36,726 nt of DNA. It comes from Octopus bimaculoides. Its lineage: Eukaryota. The notes under the pieces are model-generated. The model made no database searches. It had not been told where the DNA came from and worked only from the letters and a program-made list of their open reading frames with translations. Below are positions 101-31,710 of this stretch, one piece after another. Both the position numbers and the translations under genes were made by a program. Where the stretch lies: NCBI RefSeq assembly GCF_001194135.2, contig NC_068998.1, positions 31,150,429-31,187,154 of the forward strand, in the 5' to 3' direction. The first letter of the stretch is position 1, and each line of letters opens with the position of its first letter.

Positions 101-1130
101 TTGGGTTGTCCGGAAAGTTCGTGCCGATTTTTAAAGGAAAGAAAAAGGTCAATAAATACTTGCCATTACATTTTTAATCAACCAAATATGAACCATTTTG
201 TTGCACAATGCGTCTCCATCTTTCCTTTAACTTGAAAATACCCTCTTCCCAGAATTGAGGTGGTTTCATGGCAAAGAATTCATCAAGGTATCTTTTTATG
301 TCATCCAAGGAATTGCAATTTTTACCATTAAGACTATTCTGCAGGGGCCTGAATAAGTGGAAATCCGAAGGAGCAATATCTAGTGAATATGGAGGGCGGG
401 GTAACACATCCCAGCCGAGCTGCCGCAATTTTTGTCTGGTTCCCAAAGAAATGTGTGGTCTGGCATTATCATGTTGGAAAACAACACCCTTTCTGTTGAC
501 CAATTCTGGATGTTTCTCTTAAATTGCTGCTTTTAACTCGTCAAGTTGCGCGCAGTATTTCTCAGAATTAATTGTCTGGTTACTTGGGAGAAGCTCATAG
601 TACAGAATTCCTTTCCAATCCCTCCAGACACAAAGCAAAACTTTTTTAGGGTGAAGACCCACTTCTGGGGTGGCTAAGGGTGGCTTATGTCGCTTACTCC
701 AGGATCGTTTTCTCTGAACATTTCGGTAGATCATCCATTTCTCATCACCTGTCACAATTTGCTTAAAAAAAGGCACATTTTCATTCCGTTTATAAAGCGA
801 ATCATAGATGGAAATGTGATCCAAAAGGTTCTTCTCACTCAACTCCTGTGGTACCCAAACATCGTAGTGATTTGTGTACCCAAGCTTTACTAAGTGCTCA
901 TGAACGACGGATTTTGATAGGTTGAGGCTTTCTGCCAATTCTCAGGTGGTGCAATGTGGGTTATTCTCAGTTAATGACTTGATTTGGTCATCATCTGCAG
1001 TGGATGGTCTGCCTGATCGCTCTTTATTAATAAGGCTACAATCTTCCAAAATTCACCGAGTTCAAATATCACGCCAAGTAATATCGAATACAATAACTCA
1101 ACTGTTTACAAAGTGAAATCATGTGTTTTC
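101..1130 (-). mobile_element. Mariner (DD34D) transposon relic, 5' end lost
   Basis: TA followed by terminal repeat TTGGGTTGTCCGGAAAGTTCGTGCCGATTTT at 101. The - strand ORFs 519-938 and 174-503 carry mariner motifs WVPQEL, VTGDEKW, HPKKVLLCVW, FQHDNARPH and YSLDIAPSDFHLF, and are split by a stop/frameshift. Confidence 0.92.
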
Positions 1131-1965: not shown

Positions 1966-2339
1966 ATTTTATGGAAAGAGGAGGGAGTTGGCAAGAGGAA
2001 GGGCATCCAGTCATAGAAAACCTATCACACAAGAAAGGCAGCATATATATATAGCTAATAATGAGGGATTATCAATCCAGGCAAAATATTACGTTGTCTG
2101 GAAAATTCTGAGTGTTTTTAAACTAAATCTTTCAATGCTTCATTGAACACACCTGAAATATAACACAGTTTAAAGTTTGCTGTTGCTTGAAGTGGCAGTG
2201 CATTTCTTCTTTGTTCCTGACTGAAAATAGATTTATCTTTCATTCCGGTTACTCTTTATTGACATTTGAAATGGATAACCAAAAATTTCATATTCACCTT
2301 TTAATGTTTTTTCTTTTTAAACAAAGAAAAAATGCTGCA

Positions 2340-4250
2340 AATTTTTGAAGGTGGCCGTGAGAATCAAAGACTTGAGGTATTTTGTGTTGCAAGACAGTGT
2401 GTGCGAGAGAATCATGATGTCGTAGGAGAAAAATGTGTCTGCTTAGATAATGGTTCACTTGCACCAAACGAGGCTGCAAAGAGAAAGGTTTGGAGACGCC
2501 ACTATGACAGATTGCTCAATAAAGAGAATGAATGGGAGAAAGAGAGTCTGCCGAATGTCGACCCAACAGAGGGACTAGCTATCCAAGTTGACAGTACCAT
2601 GGTAGATAAAGCAATTAAGAGTATGAAGACAGTGAAAGCATTTGGCCCATCAGGAATCACTGCAGAGATGCTCAAAATTTCTGGCAATGTCGGCTATAGC
2701 CTAGTCACCCATACAGTTAAGCAGGTGATACGCGAAAGAGTTATACCCAATGAATGGTGTAGCAGCACCATAGTCAACTGCTACAAAAGTAAGGGTGACG
2801 CTTTAGATACAAATAATTACAGGGGTATCAAGTTGTTGGATCAGGTAACGAAAGTCACGGAGAGGGTCATAGCCCAACTAATTAGGGAGAGAGTCAGTTT
2901 AGATGAGATACAGTTTGGGTTCGTGTCAGGTAAAAGCACCACTGATGCTATATTTCTGGTAAGACAGCTGTAAGCTATGGACACATAAGAGGTGCAGCAA
3001 GGCTAACTAGGAAGATAGTGTTTGTATGTGGCAGATGCTCAGGAGCAATAAACACTGAAAATGTGCAGAGAACAACTTCTGCCACATTCCAGGGAGAAAA
3101 ATTAGAAGTAGTTGATAGCTTTCATTACCTAGGTGACCAAGTCAGTAGTGGGGGAGAGTGCGCTGAAAGTGTAGCTGCTAGAATAAGAATAGCCTGGGCA
3201 AAGTTCAGAGAGCTCTTACCTCTGCTGGTGACAAAGGGCCTCTCCCTCAGAGTAAAAGGCAGACTGTATTATGCATGTGTACGAACAGCCATGCTACATG
3301 GCAGTGAAACATGTGCCGTGACTGCTGAAGACATGTGTAAGCTTGCAAGGAATGGAAGCCAGTATGCTCCGATGGATGTGTAATGTCAGTGTGCATACTC
3401 AACAGAGTGTAAGTACCTTGAGAGAAAAGTTGGACCTAAGAAGCATCAGTTGTGGTGTGCAAGCAAGACGATTGTGCTGGTATGGTCATGTGGCGAGAAT
3501 GGATGAGGATAACTGTGTGAAAAAGTGCCACACCCTGGTAGTTGAGGGAACCTGTGGAAGAGGTAGACCCAGGAAGACCTGGGACGAGGTGGTGAAGCAC
3601 GACCTTCGAACATAAGACCTCACTGAGGCAATGACTAGTGACCGAGACCTTTGGAAATATGCTGTGCGTGAGAAGACCCGGCAAGCCAAGTGAGACCATA
3701 ATCCGTGACCTTTGTCAGGGGTGTAGCCAGCCCATTTATGCATATCTTTCTTTCATTGGACACTAAACTCTGCTTGCAAAGACCTGTTGGGGCAAGTGAA
3801 ATCGAAATCGTAAACGAACCAAATTCAATGACTGGCACCGTCCGAGCGTGATCATTGCCAGAGCAGCTGTCTGGCTTCTGTGCTGGTGGCATGTAAATAG
3901 CACCATTTGAGTGTGATCGTTACTAGTGTCGCCCTATTGGCACATGAAAAAAACATTCAAGCGAGGTCATTGCCAGTGCCGCTTGACTGGCTCCTGTGCA
4001 GGTGGCACGTAAAAAACTTCCATTTTGAGCGTGGCCGTTGCCAGTACCGCCTGACTGGCCCTTATGCCAGTGGCACGTAAAAGCACCCACTACACTCTTG
4101 GAGTGGTTGGCGTTAGGAAGGGCATCCAGCTTTAGAAACTCTGCCAGATCAGATTGGAGCCTAGTGCAGCCATCTCGTTCGCCAGTCCTCAGTTAAATTG
4201 TCCAACCCATGCCAGCATAGAAAGCGGACATTAAACAATAATGATGATGA
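2340..4250 (+). mobile_element. RTE-clade LINE, 5'-truncated, with an internal RT deletion and complete 3' tail
   Basis: ORF 2332-2973 has RT motifs KAFGPSG, NYRGIKLLD and QFGFVSGKSTTDAIF. It is followed by FHYLGDQV, RLYYACVRTAMLHGSET and GRGRPRKTW. The tail ends CATAGAAAGCGGACATTAAACAATAATGATGATGATG. Confidence 0.92.
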
Positions 4251-6439: not shown

Positions 6440-7030
6440 CATCATCATCATCATCATTGTTTAACGTCCGCTTTCCATGCTAGCATGGGTTGGACGATTT
6501 GACTGAGGACTGGTGAAACCGGATGGCAACACCAGGCTCCAATCTAAATTTGGCAGAGTTTCTACAGCTGGATGCCCTTCCTAACGCCAACCACTCAGAG
6601 AGTGTAGTAGGTGCTTTTACGTGTCACCTGCACGAAGGCCAGTCAGGCGATACTGGCAACGGCCACGCTCGAAATGGTGTCTTTTATGTGCCACCCGCAC
6701 AAGCCAGTCCAGGGGCACTGGCAACGATNNNNNNNNNNTGTCTTTTATGTGCCACCCGCACAAGCCAGTCCAGGGGCACTGGCAACGATCTCGCTCGAAA
6801 ATCCTACGGGAGCCAGTCAGGTGGTACTGGCAACGGCCACGCTCAAAATGGTGCATCTTATGTGCCACCCGCACAAGAGCCAGTCCAGGGGCACTGGCAA
6901 CGATCTTACTTGGCTTGCCGGGTCTTCTCACGCACAGCACATTTCCAAAGGTCTCGGTCAGTAGTCATTGCCTCGGTGAGGCCCAATGTACGAAGGTCTT
7001 GCCTCACCACCTCAGCCCAGGTCTTCCTGG
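6440..7030 (-). mobile_element. RTE LINE 3' end with internal tandem modules, spanning a 10-N gap
   Basis: Starts with a (CAT)n tail and is the reverse complement of 3590-4250. It includes the end of the RT ORF (CCTCACCACCTCAGCCCAGGTCTTCCTGGG). Confidence 0.9.
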
Positions 7031-7209
7031 GCCTACGATATATAAATGTAACATTATATCATCATTATCATCAGCTTTTCATGTTGGATGGTATGACAGT
7101 AGCTAGCTAGGCAGAAGACTGCACCATGCTTCACTGTCTGTTTTAATATGTTTTTTAAGGCTGGATGCCCTTCCTGACACCAAACACTACACGTTATATA
7201 TATATATAA

Positions 7210-7721: not shown

Positions 7722-8629
7722 GCAGATAAATAAAAATTCAGAAAATACATACAATAAAATCAGAAAAATACAGAAGAATCAAAAAATAAGAATAAAATAA
7801 TAAAAAAATAAGTTTATCATAAAAATTTGCTTTCCACAAATTTAGCTAACTATCTCCCACAGTATGTAAATGAATAAACCATGTGTTAAAAATAGCAAAA
7901 AAGGCTCATAGATAGAACAAAATGTTTGGAGGAAATAAAGAGGTATGTGATAAAGATAGCAGGCTTGGCTTAAGAACAATGATATTTCTTTTAGAGGCCT
8001 AAACTATTGGAATGTCACACATAACTGATTATGAAGAACAGATATATCATTCTGAAAACCATTTATAAATGCAGTAACATATAAACTCATACAATTCCTG
8101 TGAAATTTTTTCAGATACATTCATGCATGTTTGCATGCGCGCATGCACACACACACTCACACACACATGTTTCATATTGCATGTCCTTAGTTTGATATTG
8201 CATAATAGTTATTAAAAAAATGAGTGTCACTAGTCATCTCCGTGTAAGCGCTTTTTGTTTCCGAATCTTTCATGTGTATGTGTGCATGTGTACATAAATA
8301 TGTGTTTGTGTGTGTATGTGTATCTCTATATAACATGTTAGCAAAGATGGATGCTGTTCCAACATTGCGTTAATATTTAAACTTTTATTGTTATTAATAC
8401 ACTCAAAGCCACATAATATAAAAAAACATATAAGAAATCGTACTATTCTAAGCTACATATTATATACTGATTCATCTACATACTAACATAAAAACATTGA
8501 AGAACTTGTACTATTTTAAGCTACATATTACCATACAAAACATATAAGAAATGGGGTAGGGGTGGAGATGCTAAATGTGAGTGACATTAAATAGGTTACA
8601 TTAGAATAAAATAAGATAAAGATTGAAAA

Positions 8630-10160
8630 AACTTGGCTTCTGTTTTTGCTTTCAAAAAGGACCCTCTTTCAGAGTGAAAGGTAGATTGCATGATGCTTGT
8701 GTACAAATGGCTATACTCCATGGTAGTGAAACATAGGATCTGAATGCAGAGGACATGTGTAGATTGGAGAGGAATGAAGATAGTATGCTCCGTTGGATTA
8801 GCAACATCAGTGTGCATGATCAACAAAGCGCAACTGTTGAGAGAAAAGTTAGGCATAAGAGGAATCAAATGTGGCACGAGGGAGAGGAGAATGCATTGGT
8901 AACGACGTGATGCCTATGAGTAAAGACAGCTGTATACAGAAGTGTCTGTCACTAATAGTGGATGGTACCTGTGGAAGAGGGAGACCTAGGAAGACATGGG
9001 ATGAAGTGGTTAGGATTTCAGAGCTCATAGAGGAAATGACAATGGACCGGCATGTCTGGCGATATGAGGTTCTGGAGAAGACCCACTTGCGTCAGTGAAA
9101 CTGAGTGCTAGAAGTGTTGTGTCCCACCCACATGTAACAATAAAGTTTTCACACACCCTACTCCAAGAAACCGAACTACATCGACCCTTCTAAACTGCAT
9201 CTTTCTCTTCTTCACATTTCCTCTGCATACACTATGATTGTCTCTCACTCCCCTTCACTGCCCTCTTCACTGTATTCTTCTTTTCCCCACCCCATCTTTA
9301 TACCCAGGTTTTCACCAGTCACTACAATTCCCACTCCCTACTCATGCTTTCTTAGCAGTCCCTGGCCATGTATATTATGACTTCTGTACCTTGAAGGCAT
9401 GTCCTGGCAATTGCCAACATTTATCTTTCTCTTCCTTACTCTACCGTCCCTTCTATGATCTGATCCTTGTTACATGTGAATATACCCTGGCACTTTGTCA
9501 CCACCTCTTACCTGTGTTCTCTTGCTGTTTTGCTGTTTCCCACTCTCTATCTCTTGCCCTTCCCTCTGGCTATGTAGCTATATATGTCCTTTACAGTAGC
9601 ACACCTGTTTCTGCCCTCATTCTTCATCACACTCTCTCTCTTTTTCTTGCGTTTCCCTCTGGTTAGGTAACCAAGTATCTCTTTTACATCAGCAAACCTG
9701 TTTCTATCCTCTTTCTTGTACCTCTCTTTTTTCCTCTCTCTCTTTCTCTTCTCTGTCACTCTCTTTCTCTTCTCTGTCTCACTCTTTCTCTTCTCTGTCT
9801 CTCTCTTTCTCTTCTCTGTCTCTCTCTCTCTATAGCACGACATCTGTTTTTGTCTCTCCGTCACACCCTACCCCAACCTTTCATCATCTGACACAAGTTC
9901 CCCTGCTCAAATGCCACTGCCCCTCTTCAAAATTCCTTGTCTTGCAAGTTACTTGGTGACCCTGCCAGTGCTGGTGCCACGTAAAAAGCATCAATTCCAC
10001 ACTGTAAAATAGTTGGCATTTGGAAGGGCATCCAGCTGTAAAAATCCTGTCAAAGCAGACTTAGTAACCTGAGATAGTCTTCTACGTGGCCAGCTCCTGT
10101 CAACTGTCATATCCATGCATGCATAGAAGATGGACATTAAACAATGATGTTGATGATGTA
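8630..10160 (+). mobile_element. RTE LINE 3' part (RT C-terminus plus long pyrimidine-rich 3' UTR plus tail)
   Basis: Degenerate LSLRVKGR..., GTCGRGRPRKTWDEVV. The tail is GGAAGGGCATCCAGCTGTAAAA...GGACATTAAACAATGATGTTGATGATG. Confidence 0.85.
9715..9832. repeat. CT-rich low-complexity / imperfect ~20-bp tandem repeat
   Basis: Repeated CTCTTTCTCTTCTCTGT(C/CA) units. Confidence 0.85.
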
Positions 10161-16329: not shown

Positions 16330-17960
16330 CATTCAAACTGTACACATAAAATAACTCAATGTTGTTATATGTATTACATATTGTCCACCAGCGGCTCCAA
16401 ATTACTCAGGCAAGTTTGAAGACTGCCTCGCCAAAAATAGAAGTTCTAGTCAAACTGGAACAACACAGTGTATTCCTTGTGATTGACTTCAACTTCGCCA
16501 ATATGGAATGGCCTAAGGGCTTCATGCTCTCAGGAATGACACACTACCACCACCAAGTACAGTGGAGTTGCTGCTTGACCATGCTAATGCTTTATGGAGT
16601 AAACTGTGCTCCAACCAATCAGGACAAATAATATAGTGGATTTCTGCTTCTCAGTTAATATGGTTATCATTCCTAATGTGAAAGTGACACTGACACTTGC
16701 ATCACAATATAATAGAGCTAGCTATGTATGGAAAAAAAGAAGACACAGACATACAGACTATGAGAAGAACTCAAGATTGCAAACCGCTTAAACAAATATC
16801 TCAAATGCAGTTAAAACAACACTGATGGAGATTGAAAAAAGTCTGCAACAATTCCATAACAATGAGAGGGCAGATTGGGAGTGGTGTCTTAACTTTTTCC
16901 CAGTAGCTGACCTGTTACATTGAGACAATCTTCTTTGTGTAGCTTTGCTGGATTGCTTTTAGTTCTGCTATTAAATTTACATTGTGTGGTAACCACAGTT
17001 TGGGATCAGTAGTCTAAATGGCTCTTGACAAATGTCCTCCAGAGGATTATCATGGTTTCTTGTTATCATGTTTTGAAAGTTCTAAGGATCCATCCAAGCA
17101 ACTGCCTGCATTTTAAGGATCCATCCAGGCAACTGCTTGCATTTTATTGCCAACTTAGTAAGATACACCTGGAAATATGCATCACTACTCATAATAGCCA
17201 GGACATGTAGTAATTTTCATCTGAGGATTGCAGTCCCTCTTCTACCAGTGTATCCTATTTGCATTTCATTGAGCTTCATGTGTTGGTAATGCAGGGCTTT
17301 GAATTTTCTAGTATTAAGCTGTGTGTTATCCTCTGCATACCTGTATATTGTGACCATCTTCTGTTGCAGGTTTACGGTATTTTCAGGGTTTTGTATCATC
17401 TGCATAGCTGCAAGGGTTGCTCTCTGAGCAGCTGAAGGCTTGTCTGAGAGGGACATTATGAATAACAGTGACCCTAAGACACTGCTCTGTGGAACACAAC
17501 TCACTATTTGTATTTCTTTGGAGGTAGCTCCATTGGTCACCACTGCCTGAATTCTATCTTTTAGAAAGTCATGTAACCACTTTCCAAGTTTTCCATCGAT
17601 ACCAAGATCATACAGCTTGTGACATATCATACTATGGTTGACTTTATCAAAGTCTTTGCAAAGGTGAGACATATCATCTGTATTTGAGCTGTTGAGCAGC
17701 TGCTTTAGTACCTAGTTGTGGTACTGTGAAGGCTGTATCAAGTAACTTCTGCTTGGTTGAAAACCATGATGGGTATCAGTCTGCAAATCATTCTCTTCAA
17801 GGAATGCAATTAGTTTCTTTTTGACTATTTGTTCCATGGCTTCATTGATGTGTGAGGTCAGAGAGATAGGCCTATAGTTTTTAGCATCATCTCTGCTTCC
17901 TCCTGTATGGATAGGGCATATTATTCCCTCCTTCAGTTAGCCCAGGAGCTTACCACTTGC
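16330..17960 (-). mobile_element. CR1/L2-group LINE RT fragment
   Basis: The - strand encodes GSRDDAKNYRPISLTS, HHGFQPSRS, KDFDKVNH, KWLHDFLKDRIQAVV and VPQSSVLGSLLF. It is degenerate. Confidence 0.8.
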
Positions 17961-18244: not shown

Positions 18245-18575
18245 ATCATCATCATTGTCGTTTAACGTCTGCTTTCCATGCTAGCATGGGTTGGACGATT
18301 TGACTGAGGACTGGTGGACTAGGAGGCGACACCAGGCTCCAATCTGATTTGGCAGAGTTTCTACAGCTGGATGCCCTTCCTAACGCCAACCACTCTGAGA
18401 GTGTAGTGGGTGCTTTTACGTGCCACTGGCACGAGGGCCAGTCAGGCGGGTACTGGCAACGGCCACGCTCGAAATGGTGTATTTTACGTGCCACCTGCAC
18501 AAGGGCCAGTCCAGGGGCACTGGCAACGGTCTCGCTCGGATGTCTTACTGGCAAAGGCCACGCTCGAAATGATGT
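18245..18575 (-). mobile_element. RTE LINE 3' end running into an N gap
   Basis: Has a (CAT)n tail and is near-identical to 6440-6720 and 25100-25458. Confidence 0.9.
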
Positions 18576-19201
18576 NNNNNNNNNNNNNNNNNNNNNNNNN
18601 NNNNNNNNNNNNNNNNNNNNNNNNNNNNNNNNNNNNNNNNNNNNNNNNNNNNNNNNNNNNNNNNNNNNNNNNNNNNNNNNNNNNNNNNNNNNNNNNNNNN
18701 NNNNNNNNNNNNNNNNNNNNNNNNNNNNNNNNNNNNNNNNNNNNNNNNNNNNNNNNNNNNNNNNNNNNNNNNNNNNNNNNNNNNNNNNNNNNNNNNNNNN
18801 NNNNNNNNNNNNNNNNNNNNNNNNNNNNNNNNNNNNNNNNNNNNNNNNNNNNNNNNNNNNNNNNNNNNNNNNNNNNNNNNNNNNNNNNNNNNNNNNNNNN
18901 NNNNNNNNNNNNNNNNNNNNNNNNNNNNNNNNNNNNNNNNNNNNNNNNNNNNNNNNNNNNNNNNNNNNNNNNNNNNNNNNNNNNNNNNNNNNNNNNNNNN
19001 NNNNNNNNNNNNNNNNNNNNNNNNNNNNNNNNNNNNNNNNNNNNNNNNNNNNNNNNNNNNNNNNNNNNNNNNNNNNNNNNNNNNNNNNNNNNNNNNNNNN
19101 NNNNNNNNNNNNNNNNNNNNNNNNNNNNNNNNNNNNNNNNNNNNNNNNNNNNNNNNNNNNNNNNNNNNNNNNNNNNNNNNNNNNNNNNNNNNNNNNNNNN
19201 N

Positions 19202-20345
19202 CCGCTATCTAGGTGACCAAGTTAGTAGTGGGGGAGGGTGTGCTGAAAGTGTAGCTGCTAGAATAAGAATAGCCTGGGCAAAGTTCAGAGAGCTCTTACC
19301 TCTGCTGGTGACAAAGTGTCTCACTCTCAGAGTAAAAGGCAGACTGTATGACGCATGTGTACGAACAGCCATGCTTCATGGTAGTGAAACATGGGCCGTA
19401 ACTGTTGAAGACATGCATAGGCTCGCAACGAATGAAGCCAGTATGCTCCAATGGATGTGTAATGTCAGTGTGCATACTAGACAGAGTGTAAGTACCTTGA
19501 GAGAAAAGTTGAACCTCAGAAGCATCAGTTGCGGTGTGCAAGCAAGACGATTGCGCTGGTATGGTCATGTGGCGAGAATGGACGAAGATAGGTGTGTGAA
19601 AAAGTGCCATACCCTGGCAGTAGAGGGAGCCTGTGGAAGAGGTAAGCCCAGGAAGACCTGGGATGAGGTGGTGAGGCAAGATCTTCGAACATTGGGCCTC
19701 ACCGAGGCAATGACCTCTGACCGAGACCTTGGAAATATGCTGTGCGTGAGAAGACCCGGCAAGCCAAGTGAGTCCTAAATCCAAGGCCTCTGCCAGGGGT
19801 GTAGCCAGCCCACTTATGCGTACCTTTCCTTCATTGGACACTAAGCTCCGCTTGTGAAGACCTGTTAAAGCAAGTGAAATCGAAATCAAACTAAATTCAA
19901 CGACTGGCACCCATGCCAACGTCGTCTCCTTCATTGGACACGAAACTCGGCTTGCGAAGACCTATTGGGGCAAGAGAAAGCGAAATCGTGATGGCACCTG
20001 TGCCCAGCGTCGCCTCTCTGGCACTTGTGCCCGTGGCATGTGTAAAGACTTTCGAGCGAGATCGTTGCCAGTGCTGCTGGACTGGCTCTTGTGCAGGTGG
20101 TACGTAAAATACACCATTTTGAGCGTGGCCGTTGCCAGTACCGCCTGACTGGCCTTCGTGCCGGTGGCACGTAAAAGCACCCACTACACTCTCGGAGTGG
20201 TTGGTGTTAGGAAGGGCATCCAGTTGTAGAAACTGCCAAATCAGATTGGAGCCTGGTGTAGCCATCTGGTTTCACCAGTCCTCTGTCAAATCGTCCAACC
20301 CATGCTAGCATGGAAAGCAGATGTTAAACGATGATGATGATGATG
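19202..20345 (+). mobile_element. RTE LINE 3' part (RT C-terminus, 3' UTR, GAT tail)
   Basis: ORF 19308-19778 reads RVKGRLYDACVRTAMLHGSETW...GRGKPRKTWDEVV. The tail is GATGTTAAACGATGATGATGATGATGA. Confidence 0.92.
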
Positions 20346-20779: not shown

Positions 20780-21575
20780 GCGCTTATATCAATTGACAGC
20801 AGGAAAGGTACCTAGATGTGTGCCTGCAGAAACTGATGAGTTCCATTTTGCAGTTTAGTGCAGATTTATCTTGGAATAGTATAAAGTACTTTTCACTCAA
20901 AAAACAATGAACATCTCAGAGTTTTGGTACAATGCATGCATGTAAGTATTAGCTTTTTCCAAAATAGACCAGTGTATCTTAAATGGGTCAAAACCAGCTT
21001 TTAATTGCCAAATGTGCTTAGCCAGGTTCATTGCCACCCTGTTCTTTGGTTTTTTAAGGAATTTCTATGTGAGTAAAGCCTCACTTTGAAGCTGTTTTCA
21101 ATGGCACCAGTATAAATTTTGTATGTAGAGGTGTTGTTAGTCTACACCTTAGCTCTGTATACAACACTTTTAATTAGGCAATTACCATTTAAAGGACAGA
21201 TTCCAGGGTCTTTGAATTACATTTAGGTTCATCAGCAATTCTGTTAGGTTTATTGAGAATGGTCATATTGTGCTGGTTGATGTAAGAGGTAAAGTTTTTG
21301 CAATGAGAATAGCTAAACTTTAGCCTTTTTGTATTGAAGATTCTGTGATATTTATGATCAGATGGAAAGTGTCTTTATACTAAATTATAAATTTTTGTAC
21401 TTACATTAGCTCTAACACTTAAGTTAAATGTTGAATTATACCACAACACCTTTCTAGTTGTAGATCTACAAGATATTCTTGGGTTAAACCATAATACCAG
21501 TTTTTGTTGAAACTCCAAATGTAGACTAATTAACCCAGCTAAAACAGAAATAGAAATAATTAACAAGAACATTTT
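20780..21575 (-). mobile_element. Penelope-like element 3' part with GIY-YIG endonuclease remnant
   Basis: The - strand encodes RKVLWYNSTFN, HFPSDHKYHRIFN...KFSYS, CLIKSVVYRAKV...KIYTGAIENSFKVRLYSH, WSILEKA and LNCKMELISFCRH. Confidence 0.8.
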
Positions 21576-23129: not shown

Positions 23130-23435
23130 TTTATGAGATAACATAGGAGACTGATTTAAGGACATAATGATAAGAATAACAGTAACTTCATTCGGTTCAG
23201 TATTGTGCACCCATCTATAACAAGGCTTCTACTGCTCAAAGCCAAAGAGTGTGTACCCATCAGCAACTCTGGTGTCAACATCATCTTGTACACCAGGAAA
23301 TCCTTGCTGTTTTTCAGCAACTCTATCTGGGTCAAGAAGAATGGAGATGTTTTGTTTGATGTGTCACTGGGCAAATACAACAGAGCAGAATTCTGTATGC
23401 TTATAGGTGTGTATATTTTGTGCCATTTGCATGTA
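23130..23435 (+). mobile_element. Penelope-like RT fragment
   Basis: Encodes HPSITRLLLLKAK...RKSLLFFSNSIWVKKNGDVLFDVSLGKYNRAEFCMLIGVYIL (compare PLE SLLF...WVKK...FDVTMGSYDGAE.CELVGLYIL). Confidence 0.8.
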
Positions 23436-23787
23436 GAATTTCCTAATTTTACTGCAGGTTTATAAAGAGATAACTACAATCATAGTCTCAAACTGATAGA
23501 TTATTCAATTAAAAATAAATAAATGTTGATATAATGGTTCATCAGTGAATATATGTATTCTTGATACTCAAATTTAAAGTTTATATTGATCTCTTTGATA
23601 TATTGATATAAAAGCCCTTTTAAAAATCTTCCCCAAATGGGTTTCAGATAGTAATAAGAATAATTAGTTACTTCATACTAAATATGTGGTGTATTTCTTG
23701 AAAGTTTTTGAAAGGTTTTCCAAAATCATGGTAGCATCTTGAACTAATTATGAGATTCCACTAGTTTGGGAAAACTTTTAAGATAGT

Positions 23788-25099: not shown

Positions 25100-25458
25100 T
25101 CATCATCATCATCATCATCATCGTTTAACGTCCGCTTTCCATGCTAGCATGGGTTGGACGATTTGACTGAGGACTGGTGAAACCGGATGGCAACACCAGC
25201 CTCCAATCTGATTTGGCAGAGTTTCTACAGCTGGATGCCCTTCCTAACGCCAACCACTCAGAGAGTGAAGTGGGTGCTTTTACGTGTCACCCGCACGAAG
25301 GCCAGTCAGGCGGTACTGGCAACGGCCACGCTCAAAATGGTGTATTTTATGTGCCACCCGCACAAGAGCCAGTCCAGGGGCACTGGCAACGATCTCGCTC
25401 GAAAATCGTACGAAGGCCAGTCAGGCGGTACTGGCAACGACCACGCTCAAAGTGGTGT
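25100..25458 (-). mobile_element. RTE LINE 3' end running into an N gap
   Basis: Has a (CAT)n tail and is near-identical to 6440-6720. Confidence 0.9.
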
Positions 25459-26316
25459 ANNNNNNNNNNNNNNNNNNNNNNNNNNNNNNNNNNNNNNNNN
25501 NNNNNNNNNNNNNNNNNNNNNNNNNNNNNNNNNNNNNNNNNNNNNNNNNNNNNNNNNNNNNNNNNNNNNNNNNNNNNNNNNNNNNNNNNNNNNNNNNNNN
25601 NNNNNNNNNNNNNNNNNNNNNNNNNNNNNNNNNNNNNNNNNNNNNNNNNNNNNNNNNNNNNNNNNNNNNNNNNNNNNNNNNNNNNNNNNNNNNNNNNNNN
25701 NNNNNNNNNNNNNNNNNNNNNNNNNNNNNNNNNNNNNNNNNNNNNNNNNNNNNNNNNNNNNNNNNNNNNNNNNNNNNNNNNNNNNNNNNNNNNNNNNNNN
25801 NNNNNNNNNNNNNNNNNNNNNNNNNNNNNNNNNNNNNNNNNNNNNNNNNNNNNNNNNNNNNNNNNNNNNNNNNNNNNNNNNNNNNNNNNNNNNNNNNNNN
25901 NNNNNNNNNNNNNNNNNNNNNNNNNNNNNNNNNNNNNNNNNNNNNNNNNNNNNNNNNNNNNNNNNNNNNNNNNNNNNNNNNNNNNNNNNNNNNNNNNNNN
26001 NNNNNNNNNNNNNNNNNNNNNNNNNNNNNNNNNNNNNNNNNNNNNNNNNNNNNNNNNNNNNNNNNNNNNNNNNNNNNNNNNNNNNNNNNNNNNNNNNNNN
26101 NNNNNNNNNNNNNNNNNNNNNNNNNNNNNNNNNNNNNNNNNNNNNNNNNNNNNNNNNNNNNNNNNNNNNNNNNNNNNNNNNNNNNNNNNNNNNNNNNNNN
26201 NNNNNNNNNNNNNNNNNNNNNNNNNNNNNNNNNNNNNNNNNNNNNNNNNNNNNNNNNNNNNNNNNNNNNNNNNNNNNNNNNNNNNNNNNNNNNNNNNNNN
26301 NNNNNNNNNNNNNNNN

Positions 26317-26639: not shown

Positions 26640-28120
26640 ATACAATATACTCAAACCTTACAGAATGGATATATGACTGCATAACTGTTGAATAGATCAA
26701 GAAAATTAAAGACAAGCCCAAATGCAAATTCATCCAGTTCGACATTGTTTTACCCCTTGATTTTCAAAACTCTCTTCTGAAAGGTATTCAGTTTAGTAAA
26801 GCTTATACAACCATCCCTAACATTGATATAGCCTTTATAATGAATGCAAGGAAATTATTGCTTTTTCATATCCATTGAGTGAAAAAGAATGGAAACGAAC
26901 TATTTGATGTAGCTCTGGGGAGCCATGATGGAGCAGAAGTAGCAGATTTAGTTGGTTTCTACATCCTACATATCCTGAAAAAGAAGATGCCAGCATAAGA
27001 TTATATAAGGACAATGGTCTAGGAATAGTTCATAATAAAAATGGCCTATGATATGGATAAGATAAGAAAGAGATTATGCAAAATATATAGTCAACTCAAC
27101 CTAAAAACTACAATCAGCATGAATCTTAAATAATTTAATTTCCTGGGCATTAATATGAATCTTTGTACAGGCAAATTTAAAAGTTTGCATTGACTAAATG
27201 AGGACATCTCCTATATAGACAGTGGCTCTAACCATCTTTTGTCAATAATTGAACAATTAGTTAATAGCATTGGAAATCATGTTGAAGTAACTTTCAAAAA
27301 AGCAGCCCCATATGATAACACTGCATTAGAAGGATTCAATCTTAAGAACATTATAACCTATATTACACCAAGTGTAGATAGGTCAAAAGAACATAGACAT
27401 AGGAAAATATTTATTTTTTACGTTATTTACATTTGATGGATATTTGTCCTCATCTTATTTCTTGTTAATGTTTTGGCTGATATACCCTCCAGCCTTCATC
27501 AAGTGTCTTGGGGAAATTTCAAACCTGGGTTCCCATTCCTAAGGTATTTTTTGATGTTATTATTATTCAGGGTTAGGGTTAGGGTTAGGTAATAATAACA
27601 TCAAAAAATACCTAAGGAATGGGAACCCAGGTTTGAAATTTCCCCAAGACACTTGATGAAGGCTGGAGGGTATATCAGCCAAAACTTTGCGTTAACAACA
27701 AACAAGATGAGGACAAATATCCGTCAAATGTAAATAATGTACATAATTCCTCATCTCTTAAATATAGAACTGTAGGAAAATATTATAGTATAATTCTCCA
27801 TACAGCATGAATGTGACTACAAATATAGCTAGACAATTTCTGAAACTTACACACACCCACTTACTGCACTCACATAAATATCATAATCTTTAAAAGAAAT
27901 ACACTTAAAGTTAGCTATAGTTGCCTTCTCCAACATAAGATTGCAATAAGAATAATAATATTAGAAACACCCCCTCAGATCTTGTAATTGTAGATACCTC
28001 AATAACTCCCCTGAATAGTATGTTCCTAGCAAAAGAACTGGTGTGCAAGACCAACATCACTAACATGGATGGAACAATAAAAACTTATATTAGAATGACT
28101 GGAAATACCTTCAAGGAGAG
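26640..28120 (+). mobile_element. Penelope-like element (RT, linker and GIY-YIG remnant) interrupted at 27412-27772
   Basis: Encodes AKFIQFDIV, VKKNGNELFDVALGSHDGAEVADLVGFYIL and YKDNGL. After removing the insert it reads HRHRKIL*YNSPYSMNVTTNIARQFLKL, then RNTLKVSYSC, then TYIRMTGNTFKERY. Confidence 0.85.
27412..27772. mobile_element. Non-autonomous hairpin insertion: inverted arms 27423-27565 and 27590-27737, TTAGGG loop, 12-bp TSD
   Basis: TAGGAAAATATT occurs at 27400-27411 and 27773-27784. The arms are reverse complements of each other. The loop is TTCAGGGTTAGGGTTAGGGTTAGG. Confidence 0.9.
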
Positions 28121-28299
28121 ATACATGCAACACCTTTATCCGATATGGTATGGACCTTTGAAGAGTGAGGTGTGTATGTGTGTGTATGGATAACCCCTGT
28201 ATAAATTAGAGCAACATAGATAAAGCCAACAAATATCTTAGATACTCTGTTTGATAGAGTGGTAAAGGCTAAGAGAGGCTTAGAAAAGCTGGAATGAAG

Positions 28300-30964: not shown

Positions 30965-31710
30965 CATCCTCATCATCACCATCATTTAGGATCCGTTTTC
31001 CATGCTGCCATGGGTTAGACAGTTTAACCGGAACTGGTAAGCCAAGTCTGATTTTGGCTTGGTTTCTACAACTGGATGCCCTTCCTAACACCAACCATTC
31101 CAAGAATGTAGTGGGTGCCTTTAATGTGTCACTGGCATGGGTACTTTTACATGTCACCTGCATGGGTGCTTTATGTGTCATTGGCACCGGCCATGACTAC
31201 AATTTTGCTTAGCTTGACAAGTCTTCTGAAGCACAACAAATTGCCAAAGGTCACCAATACTTGTCATCACCTCCATGAGACCCAACATTCGAAGATCATG
31301 CTTCACCACCTCGTCCCATGTCTTCCTGGGTTTACCTCTACAGTTCCTCCCACAGTTAGACATTGGCACTTTATACAGCTGTCCTTGTCCATACACATCG
31401 CATGACCATACTTACACAAATGCCTCTCTTGCACACCACATTTGATGCCTCTTGTGCCCAGTTTTTCTCTCAAAATTCTTACACACTGTTGTACATGCAC
31501 ACTGACATTGCACATCCAGTGAGGTACACTAGCTACATTTCTTTCGAGCCTTTGCATGTCCTCTGCAGTCACAGCCCATGTTTCACTGTGTAACATGGCT
31601 ACTTGCACACAGGCATCATACAGTCTGCCTTTCACTCTGACGGAGAGGCCTTTTGTTACCTACAAATGTAGAAGCTCTCTTGATTTGCCCAGAGGAAGAC
31701 AATCCAGCAT
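30965..31710 (-). mobile_element. RTE LINE 3' part
   Basis: The - strand encodes MKGRLYDACVQVAMLHSETWAVTAEDMQRLERN and RGKPRKTWDEVVKHDL. A (CAT)-type tail lies at about 30965-30985. Confidence 0.85.

What the first reader, a model, noticed from the sequence alone, without database searches (positions are those of the whole stretch)
27412..27772. Mobile hairpin with a telomeric (TTAGGG)n loop inserted into a Penelope element with a 12-bp target-site duplication
Seen: a 361-bp insert flanked by exact TAGGAAAATATT duplications, whose removal restores the host Penelope peptide (HRHRKIL*YNSPYSMN). It consists of two ~145-bp inverted arms (27423-27565, 27590-27737) around the 24-nt loop TTCAGGGTTAGGGTTAGGGTTAGG. 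Known: TTAGGG is the usual metazoan and molluscan telomere repeat, PLE reverse transcriptases are related to telomerase, and endonuclease-deficient PLEs (Athena, Coprina) attach to telomeric repeats. Inference: this could be a non-autonomous PLE-derived retroelement whose two terminal-repeat halves were joined through telomeric repeats. That could occur by telomerase-like addition to a cDNA end, or by a template switch onto telomeric RNA or DNA. The TSD argues for a real insertion rather than an assembly fold-back artefact.
Basis: partly seen in the sequence, partly recalled or inferred. Interest (0 to 1): 0.8.

Follow-up and report, generated by a model that had tools for sequence, protein, structure and literature searches.

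The report
Penelope retroelement hairpin with telomeric spacer
The hairpin is a dead-on-arrival insertion of an octopus Penelope retrotransposon, two inverted copies of the element's last ~150-175 bases; this layout is typical for the family, and only the short telomere-repeat tract joining the copies is unusual.

Summary
A 361-bp insert (27412-27772) lies between exact 12-bp repeats (TAGGAAAATATT). It has about 155-bp inverted arms around TTCAGGGTTAGGGTTAGGGTTAGG.

The arms are the 3' end of a canonical endonuclease-bearing Penelope element. An Octopus sinensis locus fetched by chance (L001) has a 91%-identical single copy. That copy directly continues a Penelope ORF, carries a Penelope-type minimal hammerhead core, and ends at the same ...TATAGAACTG.

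The right arm is sense and has the full 3' end. The left arm is antisense and lacks the last 25 nt, which is the published Penelope "tail" signature. L001 shows the same layout with no telomeric tract: a 12-bp target duplication, an antisense copy starting at the same internal site, and a head-to-head sense copy.

So the hairpin is a by-product of Penelope integration, not a demonstrated mobile hairpin family. The telomeric tract is filler at the head-to-head junction. It was most likely added to a free cDNA 3' end by telomerase or by a template switch.

Only about 55 kb of octopus DNA was available, so I could not test whether the filler recurs. The host ORF is colinear across the empty site, but no tool confirmed it as Penelope-like.

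Interest is moderate: a new member of a known kind with one curious feature.

The parts
27400..27411 (.). Left copy of the 12-bp target-site duplication, TAGGAAAATATT. The top-strand primer ends in ...ATT.
   Evidence: Exact direct repeat (D6). The joined flanks are colinear with a paralogous host copy. AT-rich/ATT cleavage preference of a Penelope enzyme: PMC11167929.
27412..27565 (-). Left arm: antisense copy of the Penelope 3' end (pLTR). It starts at the internal site 25 nt before the element's 3' terminus and ends at the same 5' point as the right arm.
   Evidence: blastn to L001:9534-9677, 87.5%. It encodes the last 18 ORF codons on the minus strand at 27555-27502.
27464..27507 (-). Decayed Penelope-type minimal hammerhead core in the left arm. 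A 5-nt deletion sits at the predicted helix III/cleavage region.
   Evidence: Manual motif parse and alignment. Not called by Rfam.
27566..27589 (+). Spacer/loop TTCAGGG(TTAGGG)2TTAGG: G-strand telomeric filler at the head-to-head junction. The perfect array is 27569-27589.
   Evidence: 0 expected by chance. Absent from the homologous junction in L001.
27590..27747 (+). Right arm: sense copy of the Penelope 3' end. It holds the last 18 codons of the ORF (27600-27653), a TGATGA double stop and the 3' untranslated/pLTR sequence.
   Evidence: blastn to L001:9534-9709, 90.9% over 176 nt including the tail. tblastn 83% to the L001 ORF C-terminus. Alignment.
27648..27696 (+). Decayed Penelope-type minimal hammerhead: GACAC|UUGAUGA|A|GGCUGG-8nt-UCAGCC|AAAA|...GUU. 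C3 and G12 are mutated here. Both are intact in L001, which instead has G10.1 mutated.
   Evidence: [quoted passage not shown] Rfam gives no hit.
27748..27772 (+). 25-nt 'tail': the terminal segment of the element, present on the sense arm only. It ends ...TATAGAACTG, the same terminus as in L001.
   Evidence: The 'tail' is defined in PMC3846280 and PMC8557442 and explained by two RT start sites in PMC11167929. ATG plus 11 codons stay open to the end (MYIIPHLLNIEL; MFIISHLLNIEL in L001).
27773..27784 (.). Right copy of the 12-bp target-site duplication.
   Evidence: D6.
26879..27411 (+). Host, upstream part: decayed retroelement ORF with RT-like and thumb-like motifs and several stops. The insert interrupts it.
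   Evidence: No Pfam, PDB or HMMER confirmation.
27785..28190 (+). Host, downstream part: ...L*YNSPYSMNVTTNIARQFLKL... up to a GIY-YIG-like KTYIRMTGNTFKERYMQH.
   Evidence: The paralogue at 21339-21455(-) is colinear across the junction.

Best explanation
The insert is a single, dead-on-arrival integration product of an endonuclease-bearing Penelope (Penelope/Poseidon-type) retrotransposon of Octopus.

What is shown:
- Each arm is the element's 3' terminal unit (pLTR). It holds the last 18 codons of the RT-endonuclease ORF, a minimal hammerhead motif and the 3' end.
- The right arm is sense and complete.
- The left arm is antisense and starts 25 nt short of the terminus.
- A 12-bp target duplication flanks the pair.

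Inferred mechanism, following published in-vitro work on a lizard Penelope:
1. The enzyme cut both target strands 12 bp apart.
2. Both 3'-OH ends primed reverse transcription of Penelope RNA. The bottom strand started at the terminal site, which gives the tail. The top strand started at the adjacent internal site, which gives no tail.
3. Both cDNAs stopped after about 150 nt at the same template position. This was probably the 5' end of a short or broken template.
4. One free cDNA 3' end received about 3.5 telomeric repeats.
5. The ends were then bridged by a template switch and fill-in.

My split for the source of the repeats:
- about 45%: telomerase acting on the free cDNA 3' end, as in short interstitial telomeric insertions at breaks and as in 5' capping of endonuclease-less Penelope relatives;
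- about 25%: the reverse transcriptase switching onto a telomeric RNA or the telomerase RNA template;
- about 20%: a later break at the centre of an originally spacer-less palindrome, healed with telomeric filler;
- about 10%: other.

The element has no function at this site. If transcribed it would form about 150 bp of double-stranded RNA.
For: Anatomy.

The arm is a Penelope 3' end:
- Window 27597-27772 matches L001:9534-9709 at 90.9% over 176 nt, as a monomer, ending at the same GAACTG.
- Upstream in L001 the translation reads FLDVLI...YRKPTFTG.YLNFNSHH, then ...CMYSILCSCGRLYKGETCNPLKIRVDEHHKAV...GIADHVW, then ...RLKEAAHMLG...SIWEPILNIEKYLRNENPGSKFPQDT**. The stop codons lie inside the arm homologue.
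- Both window arms encode these last 18 residues.
- Hammerhead core with Penelope-specific traits: against PMC4209133.

Second example of the architecture, in L001:
- 12-bp TSD AACTAAAAGCCT/AACTAGAAGCCT.
- The antisense copy begins at the same internal site (TATTTACA...).
- A head-to-head sense copy carries the tail.
- The reconstructed empty site is colinear with a LINE copy in the window.

Literature:
- Inverted 5'-truncated copy plus one-sided 30-40 bp tail plus short TSD: PMC3846280, PMC8557442.
- Both strands cleaved and extended, two adjacent internal RT start sites that define the tail, AT-rich/ATT target: PMC11167929.
- Telomeric repeats added to truncated 5' ends of endonuclease-less relatives: PMC3846280.
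- Telomerase-mediated short telomeric insertions at breaks: PMC2246262.
Against: - Only two head-to-head junctions of this family could be examined, and only one has the telomeric tract. The filler's origin is inferred, not shown.
- Pfam does not call GIY-YIG or RT on the L001 fragment, and Rfam does not call the hammerhead. Both identifications rest on motif reading and published descriptions.
- The first repeat is TTCAGGG. The in-register microhomology expected for telomerase priming is imperfect: TT, an extra C, then AGGG.
- The identical 5' end point of the two arms and the very uneven arm divergence are not predicted by simple two-strand priming. They need an added assumption, such as a short template, copying of one arm from the other, or later gene conversion near the hairpin tip.
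- Reads were not available, so a partial assembly error in the palindrome cannot be formally excluded.
Confidence: 0.8

Rival explanations
1. The whole hairpin, telomeric loop included, is the unit of a non-autonomous mobile family that Penelope enzymes copy in trans.
For: - It has a clean TSD.
- Penelope enzymes can mobilise sequences bounded by pLTRs in trans (PMC3846280).
- Both arms share the same differences from the O. sinensis copy.
Against: - No second hairpin was found in the window or in L001-L009.
- The only other copies seen are a monomer and a head-to-head pair, with different truncation points and no telomeric spacer.
- The one-sided tail and the internal start of the antisense arm are signatures of de novo two-strand priming, not of copying a pre-formed hairpin.
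- Searches with translated arm frames found nothing.
- The sample is tiny, about 55 kb, so this is weakly tested.
Confidence: 0.07
2. The insertion first formed as a spacer-less or near-perfect palindrome by snap-back self-priming. Later the unstable centre broke and was healed with a short telomeric insertion.
For: - The two arms end at exactly the same nucleotide, as expected if one arm was copied from the other.
- Palindromes at Penelope inverted junctions and self-priming are discussed in PMC3846280.
- Short telomeric insertions at double-strand breaks are documented in mammals (PMC2246262, PMC7215372, PMC8537989).
- Near-identity of the inner arm parts fits hairpin-tip correction.
Against: - Snap-back copying of the sense arm would not by itself stop 25 nt short at the very site where the L001 antisense copy also starts.
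- No orthologous pre-break allele is available.
- Telomerase-mediated break healing is not documented in cephalopods in the papers read.
Confidence: 0.15
3. It is a fold-back assembly artefact of a short-read scaffold.
For: The window is a gapped scaffold with four N runs. Penelope inverted and tandem structures are known to disturb short-read assemblies (PMC8557442).
Against: - Exact 12-bp TSD.
- Host frame colinear across the empty site.
- The arms are not identical: 9 mismatches and a 5-nt indel.
- A non-palindromic 24-nt spacer.
- The asymmetric tail reproduces a biological signature seen independently in O. sinensis.
Confidence: 0.03
4. It is a DNA transposon of the MITE or foldback type with long terminal inverted repeats.
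For: Long inverted arms and a flanking direct repeat.
Against: - The arms are homologous to the coding C-terminus and 3' end of a retroelement, and also occur as a monomer.
- The inverted repeat does not reach the right end; there is a 25-nt unpaired tail.
- To my knowledge a 12-bp TSD is not characteristic of any cut-and-paste superfamily.
- No tRNA or SINE head.
Confidence: 0.01

Closest known systems
Endonuclease-bearing Penelope-like elements (Penelope/Poseidon clade): insertions with an adjacent inverted 5'-truncated copy (inverted pLTR), a one-sided 30-40 bp 'tail' and a short TSD (PMC3846280, PMC8557442, PMC11167929)
   Same: - Head-to-head inverted copies of the element's terminal unit.
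- A tail on one arm only (25 nt here).
- The antisense copy starts at a fixed internal site.
- A 12-bp TSD at an AT-rich target ending in ATT.
- A minimal hammerhead in the repeated unit.
- Continuity with an RT-GIY-YIG ORF in a relative.
   Different: - Truncation is extreme: no RT or endonuclease coding sequence remains, so the product is a pure hairpin.
- Both arms stop at the same nucleotide.
- A (TTAGGG)3.5 tract fills the junction. None of the four Penelope papers read describes this for endonuclease-bearing elements.
Endonuclease-deficient, telomere-attached Penelope relatives (Athena, Coprina)
   Same: G-strand telomeric repeats directly follow the truncated-5'-end side of an antisense cDNA copy. 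This is the arrangement produced when telomerase extends the cDNA.
   Different: - The relative here encodes a GIY-YIG endonuclease.
- The element's 3' end has no reverse-complement telomeric repeats.
- The site is internal, with a TSD, not a chromosome end.
Short interstitial telomeric sequences inserted at double-strand breaks by telomerase (Nergadze et al., PMC2246262; PMC7215372; PMC8537989)
   Same: A few perfect TTAGGG units inserted in one step at a site where free DNA 3' ends existed.
   Different: - Those cases are mammalian break-repair events without a retroelement intermediate.
- Here the tract sits at a cDNA-cDNA junction, and in-register microhomology is imperfect.
   Same: Both target strands prime reverse transcription, which gives an inverted 5' segment inside one TSD.
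   Different: Twin priming inverts a different, more 5' segment of the same RNA, so no hairpin results. Here the same 150 nt are present in both orientations.

Membership tests
Endonuclease-bearing Penelope-like element (insertion product) | The sequence is part of an element with a single ORF encoding an RT followed by a C-terminal GIY-YIG endonuclease. | tested here: met
   The arm is 91% identical to L001:9534-9709. That stretch continues an ORF remnant with FLDV.../YRKPTFTG.YLNFNSHH (RT7/thumb) and CMYSILCSCGRLYKGETCNPLKIRVDEHHKAV (GIY-YIG pattern). Caveats: the domains were recognised by motif, Pfam gave no hit, and the L001 copy is itself 5'-truncated.
Endonuclease-bearing Penelope-like element (insertion product) | An inverted 5'-truncated copy lies immediately adjacent, head-to-head. 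| tested here: met
   Arms 27413-27565 and 27590-27747. The same arrangement is in L001: 8083-8711 antisense, 8712-9709 sense.
Endonuclease-bearing Penelope-like element (insertion product) | An optional short 'tail' extension is present at one end only. It corresponds to the interval between two RT start sites. | tested here: met
   The 25-nt tail at 27748-27772 is on the sense arm only. The antisense copies in the window and in L001 both start at the same internal site, about 25-26 nt from the terminus. Published tails are 30-40 bp, so this one is slightly shorter.
Endonuclease-bearing Penelope-like element (insertion product) | Short target-site duplication at an AT-rich target. | tested here: met
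   12-bp exact TSD TAGGAAAATATT. 12-bp TSD with one mismatch in L001.
Endonuclease-bearing Penelope-like element (insertion product) | Hammerhead ribozyme motif in the pLTR. | tested here: inconclusive
   A manual parse gives a minimal hammerhead with the Penelope-specific extra base between positions 9 and 10.1, G10.1-C11.1, and helix I GACAC/GUGUU in the three-copy consensus. Every copy has at least one core or stem mutation, and Rfam reports no hammerhead at E <= 10.
Endonuclease-deficient telomeric Penelope relatives (Athena/Coprina) | No endonuclease domain, and reverse-complement telomeric repeats at the element's 3' end. | tested here: not met
   The relative in L001 has a GIY-YIG pattern. 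The element ends ...TATAGAACTG in both species.
Endonuclease-deficient telomeric Penelope relatives (Athena/Coprina) | Location at chromosome ends without a TSD. | tested here: not met
   The insert lies inside another retroelement and has a 12-bp TSD.
Propagating non-autonomous hairpin family | Several independent copies with both arms, the telomeric loop and their own TSDs. | tested here: inconclusive
   None was found in the window, L001 or L002-L009. Exact-word scans of viral and metagenome collections and a translated-frame protein search were also empty. No cephalopod genome could be searched.
Telomerase-mediated interstitial telomeric insertion | [quoted passage not shown] | tested here: inconclusive
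   The perfect 21-nt array is present. The preceding bases are TT-C-AGGG, so they are in register only if the C is ignored. The ancestral site is not available.
MITE / foldback DNA transposon | Terminal inverted repeats that reach both ends, and a superfamily-specific TSD. | tested here: not met
   25 nt at the right end are unpaired. The arms are retroelement sequence.
Host ORF as a Penelope-like element | Detectable homology to Penelope RT/GIY-YIG proteins. | tested here: inconclusive
   No Pfam, PDB, word-indexed or exhaustive HMMER hit. No significant BLASTP match to the L001 Penelope. Only the motif order is consistent: FLG..., SNH..., YNSPYS..., a Cys-rich linker in the paralogue (CPLNGNCL), then VVYRAKV...YTG..E..FK.R..H.

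The most novel reading that the evidence does not exclude
Telomeric-repeat filler at head-to-head junctions, or at truncated 5' ends, is a recurrent feature of endonuclease-bearing Penelope insertions in cephalopods. That would mean free Penelope cDNA 3' ends inside chromosomes are regular substrates for telomerase. Alternatively, the telomerase-related Penelope reverse transcriptase can itself copy a telomeric template. Either case would give a mechanistic bridge between intrachromosomal Penelope elements, their telomere-attached relatives and telomerase.
Probability: 0.12. Interest if true: 0.75.

Novelty: new member of a known kind. Interest (0 to 1): 0.4.

Why it matters
This minimal locus shows, in 361 bp, the whole integration signature of Penelope-like elements. 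That includes two-strand priming, two start sites 25 nt apart, and a 12-bp staggered cut. A second species supports the same signature.

The telomeric filler is the only part that could matter more widely. Penelope reverse transcriptases are the closest relatives of telomerase, and only the endonuclease-less lineages are known to be associated with telomeric repeats. If such filler proved frequent at internal Penelope junctions, it would show telomerase or a telomerase-like activity acting on retrotransposition intermediates. It would also help explain where short interstitial telomeric tracts in octopus genomes come from.

As a single case it is an anecdote. The hairpin itself is also a potential source of double-stranded RNA.

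Tried and rejected
- **Rfam, window:** only sub-threshold generic long-hairpin microRNA models matched. They reflect the perfect stem, not a family.
- **Rfam, L001:** chance-level hits only, all far below gathering scores.
- **tRNA scan:** none, so this is not a tRNA-derived SINE.
- **Exact-word scans:** arm 23-mers in viral contigs and JGI metagenomes gave 0 hits.
- **Six-frame 'spurious ORF' trick:** searching the 5.8-billion-protein set with the arm translations gave 0 hits.
- **Host ORF:** no result from Pfam, PDB, the word-indexed search or exhaustive HMMER with the longest stop-free 72 aa.
- **Full-text search of papers for arm strings:** none.
- **O. vulgaris repeat paper:** the supplement holds no library.
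- **Pfam on the L001 Penelope fragment:** no RT or GIY-YIG hit.
- **Other loci:** L002-L004, reached through LINE homologues, contain no arm copy or telomeric tract.
- **Distant Penelope relatives in metagenomes (L005-L009):** too divergent and decayed, with no telomeric tracts.
- **Possible mini-copy in L001:** a 45-nt Penelope 3' fragment next to the (CCCTAA)3 at L001:6504-6521 was rejected, because the alignment score was within the shuffle range.
- **Loop as diverged coding sequence:** rejected. The idea was that the loop is diverged Penelope coding sequence (SADMGSIWEP region). By-eye identity is only about 50%, and a perfect 21-nt telomeric array is not expected by drift.
- **Hammerhead cleavage sets the arms' shared 5' end:** rejected. 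The predicted cleavage site is at about 27680-27690, in the outer half of the arm.
Full report
**1. The observation**

The sequence is as described.
- TAGGAAAATATT occurs at 27400-27411 and again at 27773-27784. The 361 bp between them (27412-27772) fold into one long hairpin: -152.5 kcal/mol as DNA, against -31.6 +/- 4.3 for shuffles, z = -28.
- The arms are 27413-27565 and 27590-27747.
- The loop, 27566-27589, is TTCAGGGTTAGGGTTAGGGTTAGG. It holds a perfect 3.5-unit AGGGTT array. No dinucleotide shuffle of the window reproduces that array, even with three mismatches.

- The last 25 nt of the insert (27748-27772) have no partner in the left arm.
- The arms are almost identical near the loop (1 mismatch in 95 nt). 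Near the ends they differ by 8 mismatches and a 5-nt indel in 59 nt (Fisher p = 0.002).
- The arm sequence occurs nowhere else in the 36.7-kb window.

The window is a gapped eukaryotic scaffold full of SINE, LINE and mariner debris.

**2. It is a real insertion**

Removing the insert and one repeat copy joins the two flanks in one reading frame...SKEHRHRKIL*YNSPYSMNVTTNIARQFLKL.... A second, independent copy of the same host family lies in the window at 21339-21455 on the minus strand. It reads ...TTRKVLWYNSTFNLSVRANVSTKIYNLV... and aligns across the junction without a gap (tblastn E = 0.002). The 12-bp repeat is therefore a target-site duplication.

**3. What the arms are**

No cephalopod genome can be searched with these tools. 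A homologue of a LINE ORF from elsewhere in the window gave access to 20.7 kb of Octopus sinensis chromosome CM016869.1 (L001). By luck this piece contains the arm.
- Window 27597-27772 (right arm plus the unpaired 25 nt) matches L001:9534-9709 at 90.9% over 176 nt. The match is in the same orientation, occurs as a single copy, and stops exactly at the insert's last base...TATAGAACTG.
- Upstream of the match, L001 translates as a canonical Penelope element:
  - FLDVLI...IYRKPTFTG.YLNFNSHH;
  - then ...DCMYSILCSCGRLYKGETCNPLKIRVDEHHKAV...GIADHVW, which is the GIY-YIG pattern;
  - then ...RLKEAAHMLGHNNLLSKLSADMGSIWEPILNIEKYLRNENPGSKFPQDT**.
- The stop codons lie about 55 nt inside the arm homologue. 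Both window arms encode these last 18 residues, one on each strand.

So each arm is the 3' terminal unit of an endonuclease-bearing Penelope element. The right arm is sense and the left arm is antisense.

The unit also carries a decayed minimal hammerhead: GACAC | (C/U)UGAUGA | A | (G/A)GCUGG-8 nt-UCAGCC | (G/A)AAA | ... GUU.
- It has the traits that Cervera and de la Pena list for Penelope hammerheads: an extra base between positions 9 and 10.1, a G10.1-C11.1 pair, a long helix II, a 4-5 bp helix I and no helix III (PMC4209133).
- Each copy has a different disabling change, and Rfam calls none of them. I treat this as supportive, not proven.
- The ORF's TGATGA double stop is the hammerhead core itself.
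- The last 36 nt of the unit are an ATG plus 11 open codons (MYIIPHLLNIEL; MFIISHLLNIEL in L001). This resembles the published finding that pLTRs include the first codons of the next tandem unit's ORF (PMC3846280).

**4. The hairpin is the family's normal insertion architecture**

Published descriptions:
- Arkhipova et al. describe the typical Penelope insert as carrying an adjacent inverted pLTR, a short TSD and a "tail" of about 31 bp on one of the inverted repeats. The inverted copy is shorter (PMC3846280).
- Craig et al. describe an inverted 5'-truncated copy next to the 5' end and a one-sided 30-40 bp tail (PMC8557442).
- Frangieh et al. showed in vitro that a lizard Penelope protein cleaves and extends both target strands. 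It starts reverse transcription at two adjacent internal sites whose interval is the tail, and it prefers AT-rich targets, especially 5'-ATT-3' (PMC11167929).

The window insert fits point by point. It has a 12-bp TSD in AT-rich DNA whose top-strand primer ends in ATT. Its sense arm reaches the terminus. Its antisense arm starts 25 nt short.

L001 supplies an independent replicate.
- A 12-bp TSD (AACTAAAAGCCT / AACTAGAAGCCT) flanks the pair.
- An antisense Penelope copy (8083-8711) begins at the same internal site (TATTTACA...).
- A head-to-head sense copy (8712-9709) carries the tail.
- Its reconstructed empty site is colinear with a LINE copy in the window.

In L001 the two copies are truncated at different points. 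The junction carries no telomeric tract and no evident filler. The inverted structure is therefore generated anew at each integration. It is not a unit that is copied.

**5. The telomeric tract**

On the plus strand the G-rich repeats follow the 3' end of the antisense (cDNA-sense) arm and precede the 5'-truncated sense arm.
- This is the arrangement expected if a nascent cDNA 3' end was extended with telomeric repeats before the two halves were joined.
- It is also the arrangement known from endonuclease-less Penelope relatives, whose truncated 5' ends receive telomeric repeats (PMC3846280).
- Short perfect telomeric tracts are known to be inserted at free DNA ends by telomerase in mammals, usually with in-register microhomology (PMC2246262; also PMC7215372 and PMC8537989).
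- Here the register is imperfect (TT-C-AGGG).

Three alternatives cannot be separated with the data: a template switch of the reverse transcriptase onto a telomeric RNA or the telomerase RNA, capture of filler DNA, and later healing of a break at the palindrome centre. Both arms end at exactly the same nucleotide, and the arms are nearly identical near the tip. Both facts fit a short template with a defined 5' end, copying of one arm from the other, or later correction at the hairpin tip. I cannot tell which applies.

**6. The host**

The interrupted ORF has a plausible Penelope-like motif order. It reads MGS-type RT motif, FLG..., SNH..., YNSPYS.... The paralogue adds a Cys-rich CPLNGNCL linker and VVYRAKV...YTG..E..FK.R..H. 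No tool confirmed it. It shows no significant similarity to the L001 Penelope. "Inserted into a Penelope element" remains unverified. If the host is a Penelope-like element, it belongs to a different clade from the element that formed the hairpin.

**7. Verdict**

However, the "mobile hairpin" is an extremely 5'-truncated, dead-on-arrival Penelope integration product with the family's standard inverted-copy, tail and TSD signature. It is a new member of a known kind.

The (TTAGGG)3.5 filler at the head-to-head junction is unusual and worth a genome-wide census.

Noticed in passing
L001:6504-6521: A second short interstitial telomeric tract, (CCCTAA)3, lies in the 20.7-kb O. sinensis locus, about 1.5 kb from the Penelope pair. 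With the window's tract that makes two tracts of three or more units in about 55 kb. This hints that short telomeric tracts may be unusually dense in octopus genomes. A nearby 13-nt match to the arm is within chance.
   Followed up: partly
window 21000-21560 (-) and 23331-23444 (+): Two further decayed fragments of the host retroelement family lie on opposite strands about 2 kb apart. One has a Cys-rich linker and a GIY-YIG-like motif (CPLNGNCL...VVYRAKV...YTG). The family gave no hit in Pfam or in two very large protein searches.
   Followed up: partly
window 27654-27659 and L001:9591-9596: The Penelope ORF ends in a TGATGA double stop, which is also the conserved (C)UGAUGA core of the hammerhead motif. 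The ribozyme core and the translation stop therefore overlap.
   Followed up: partly
window 27412-27470 versus 27690-27747: Almost all arm-to-arm differences lie in the outer third (8 mismatches plus a 5-nt indel in 59 nt, against 1 in 95 nt; p = 0.002). Most derived states are in the antisense arm, near its priming site and at the predicted hammerhead cleavage region. The cause is unknown: error-prone initiation, two templates, or tip-proximal gene conversion.
   Followed up: partly
L001:8136-8268: In the antisense Penelope copy in O. sinensis, about 130 nt of unrelated sequence replace about 70 nt between the ORF end and the hammerhead region. The replacement includes a tRNA/SINE-like stretch (GGAATTGAACTCGGAATCTTGGGGTTAG...). 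This may be template switching during reverse transcription, or a subfamily difference.
   Followed up: no
window 6523-7110, 18349-18575, 19897-20265, 25177-25459 and others: There are many copies of an octopus SINE, several with internal tandem duplications of about 60-67 bp (for example 25278-25406, period 67). Three of the four scaffold gaps (6729-6738, 18576-19201, 25460-26316) fall inside or next to such copies, which suggests assembly breaks at repeats.
   Followed up: no
window 519-938 (-), 2332-3383 (+), 17217-17672 (-), 31303-31635 (-): Other transposon remnants are present: a mariner-type transposase fragment and several LINE reverse-transcriptase fragments. The best database relative of the 2332-2973 ORF is an uncharacterised Octopus sinensis protein (59% identity).
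   Followed up: partly
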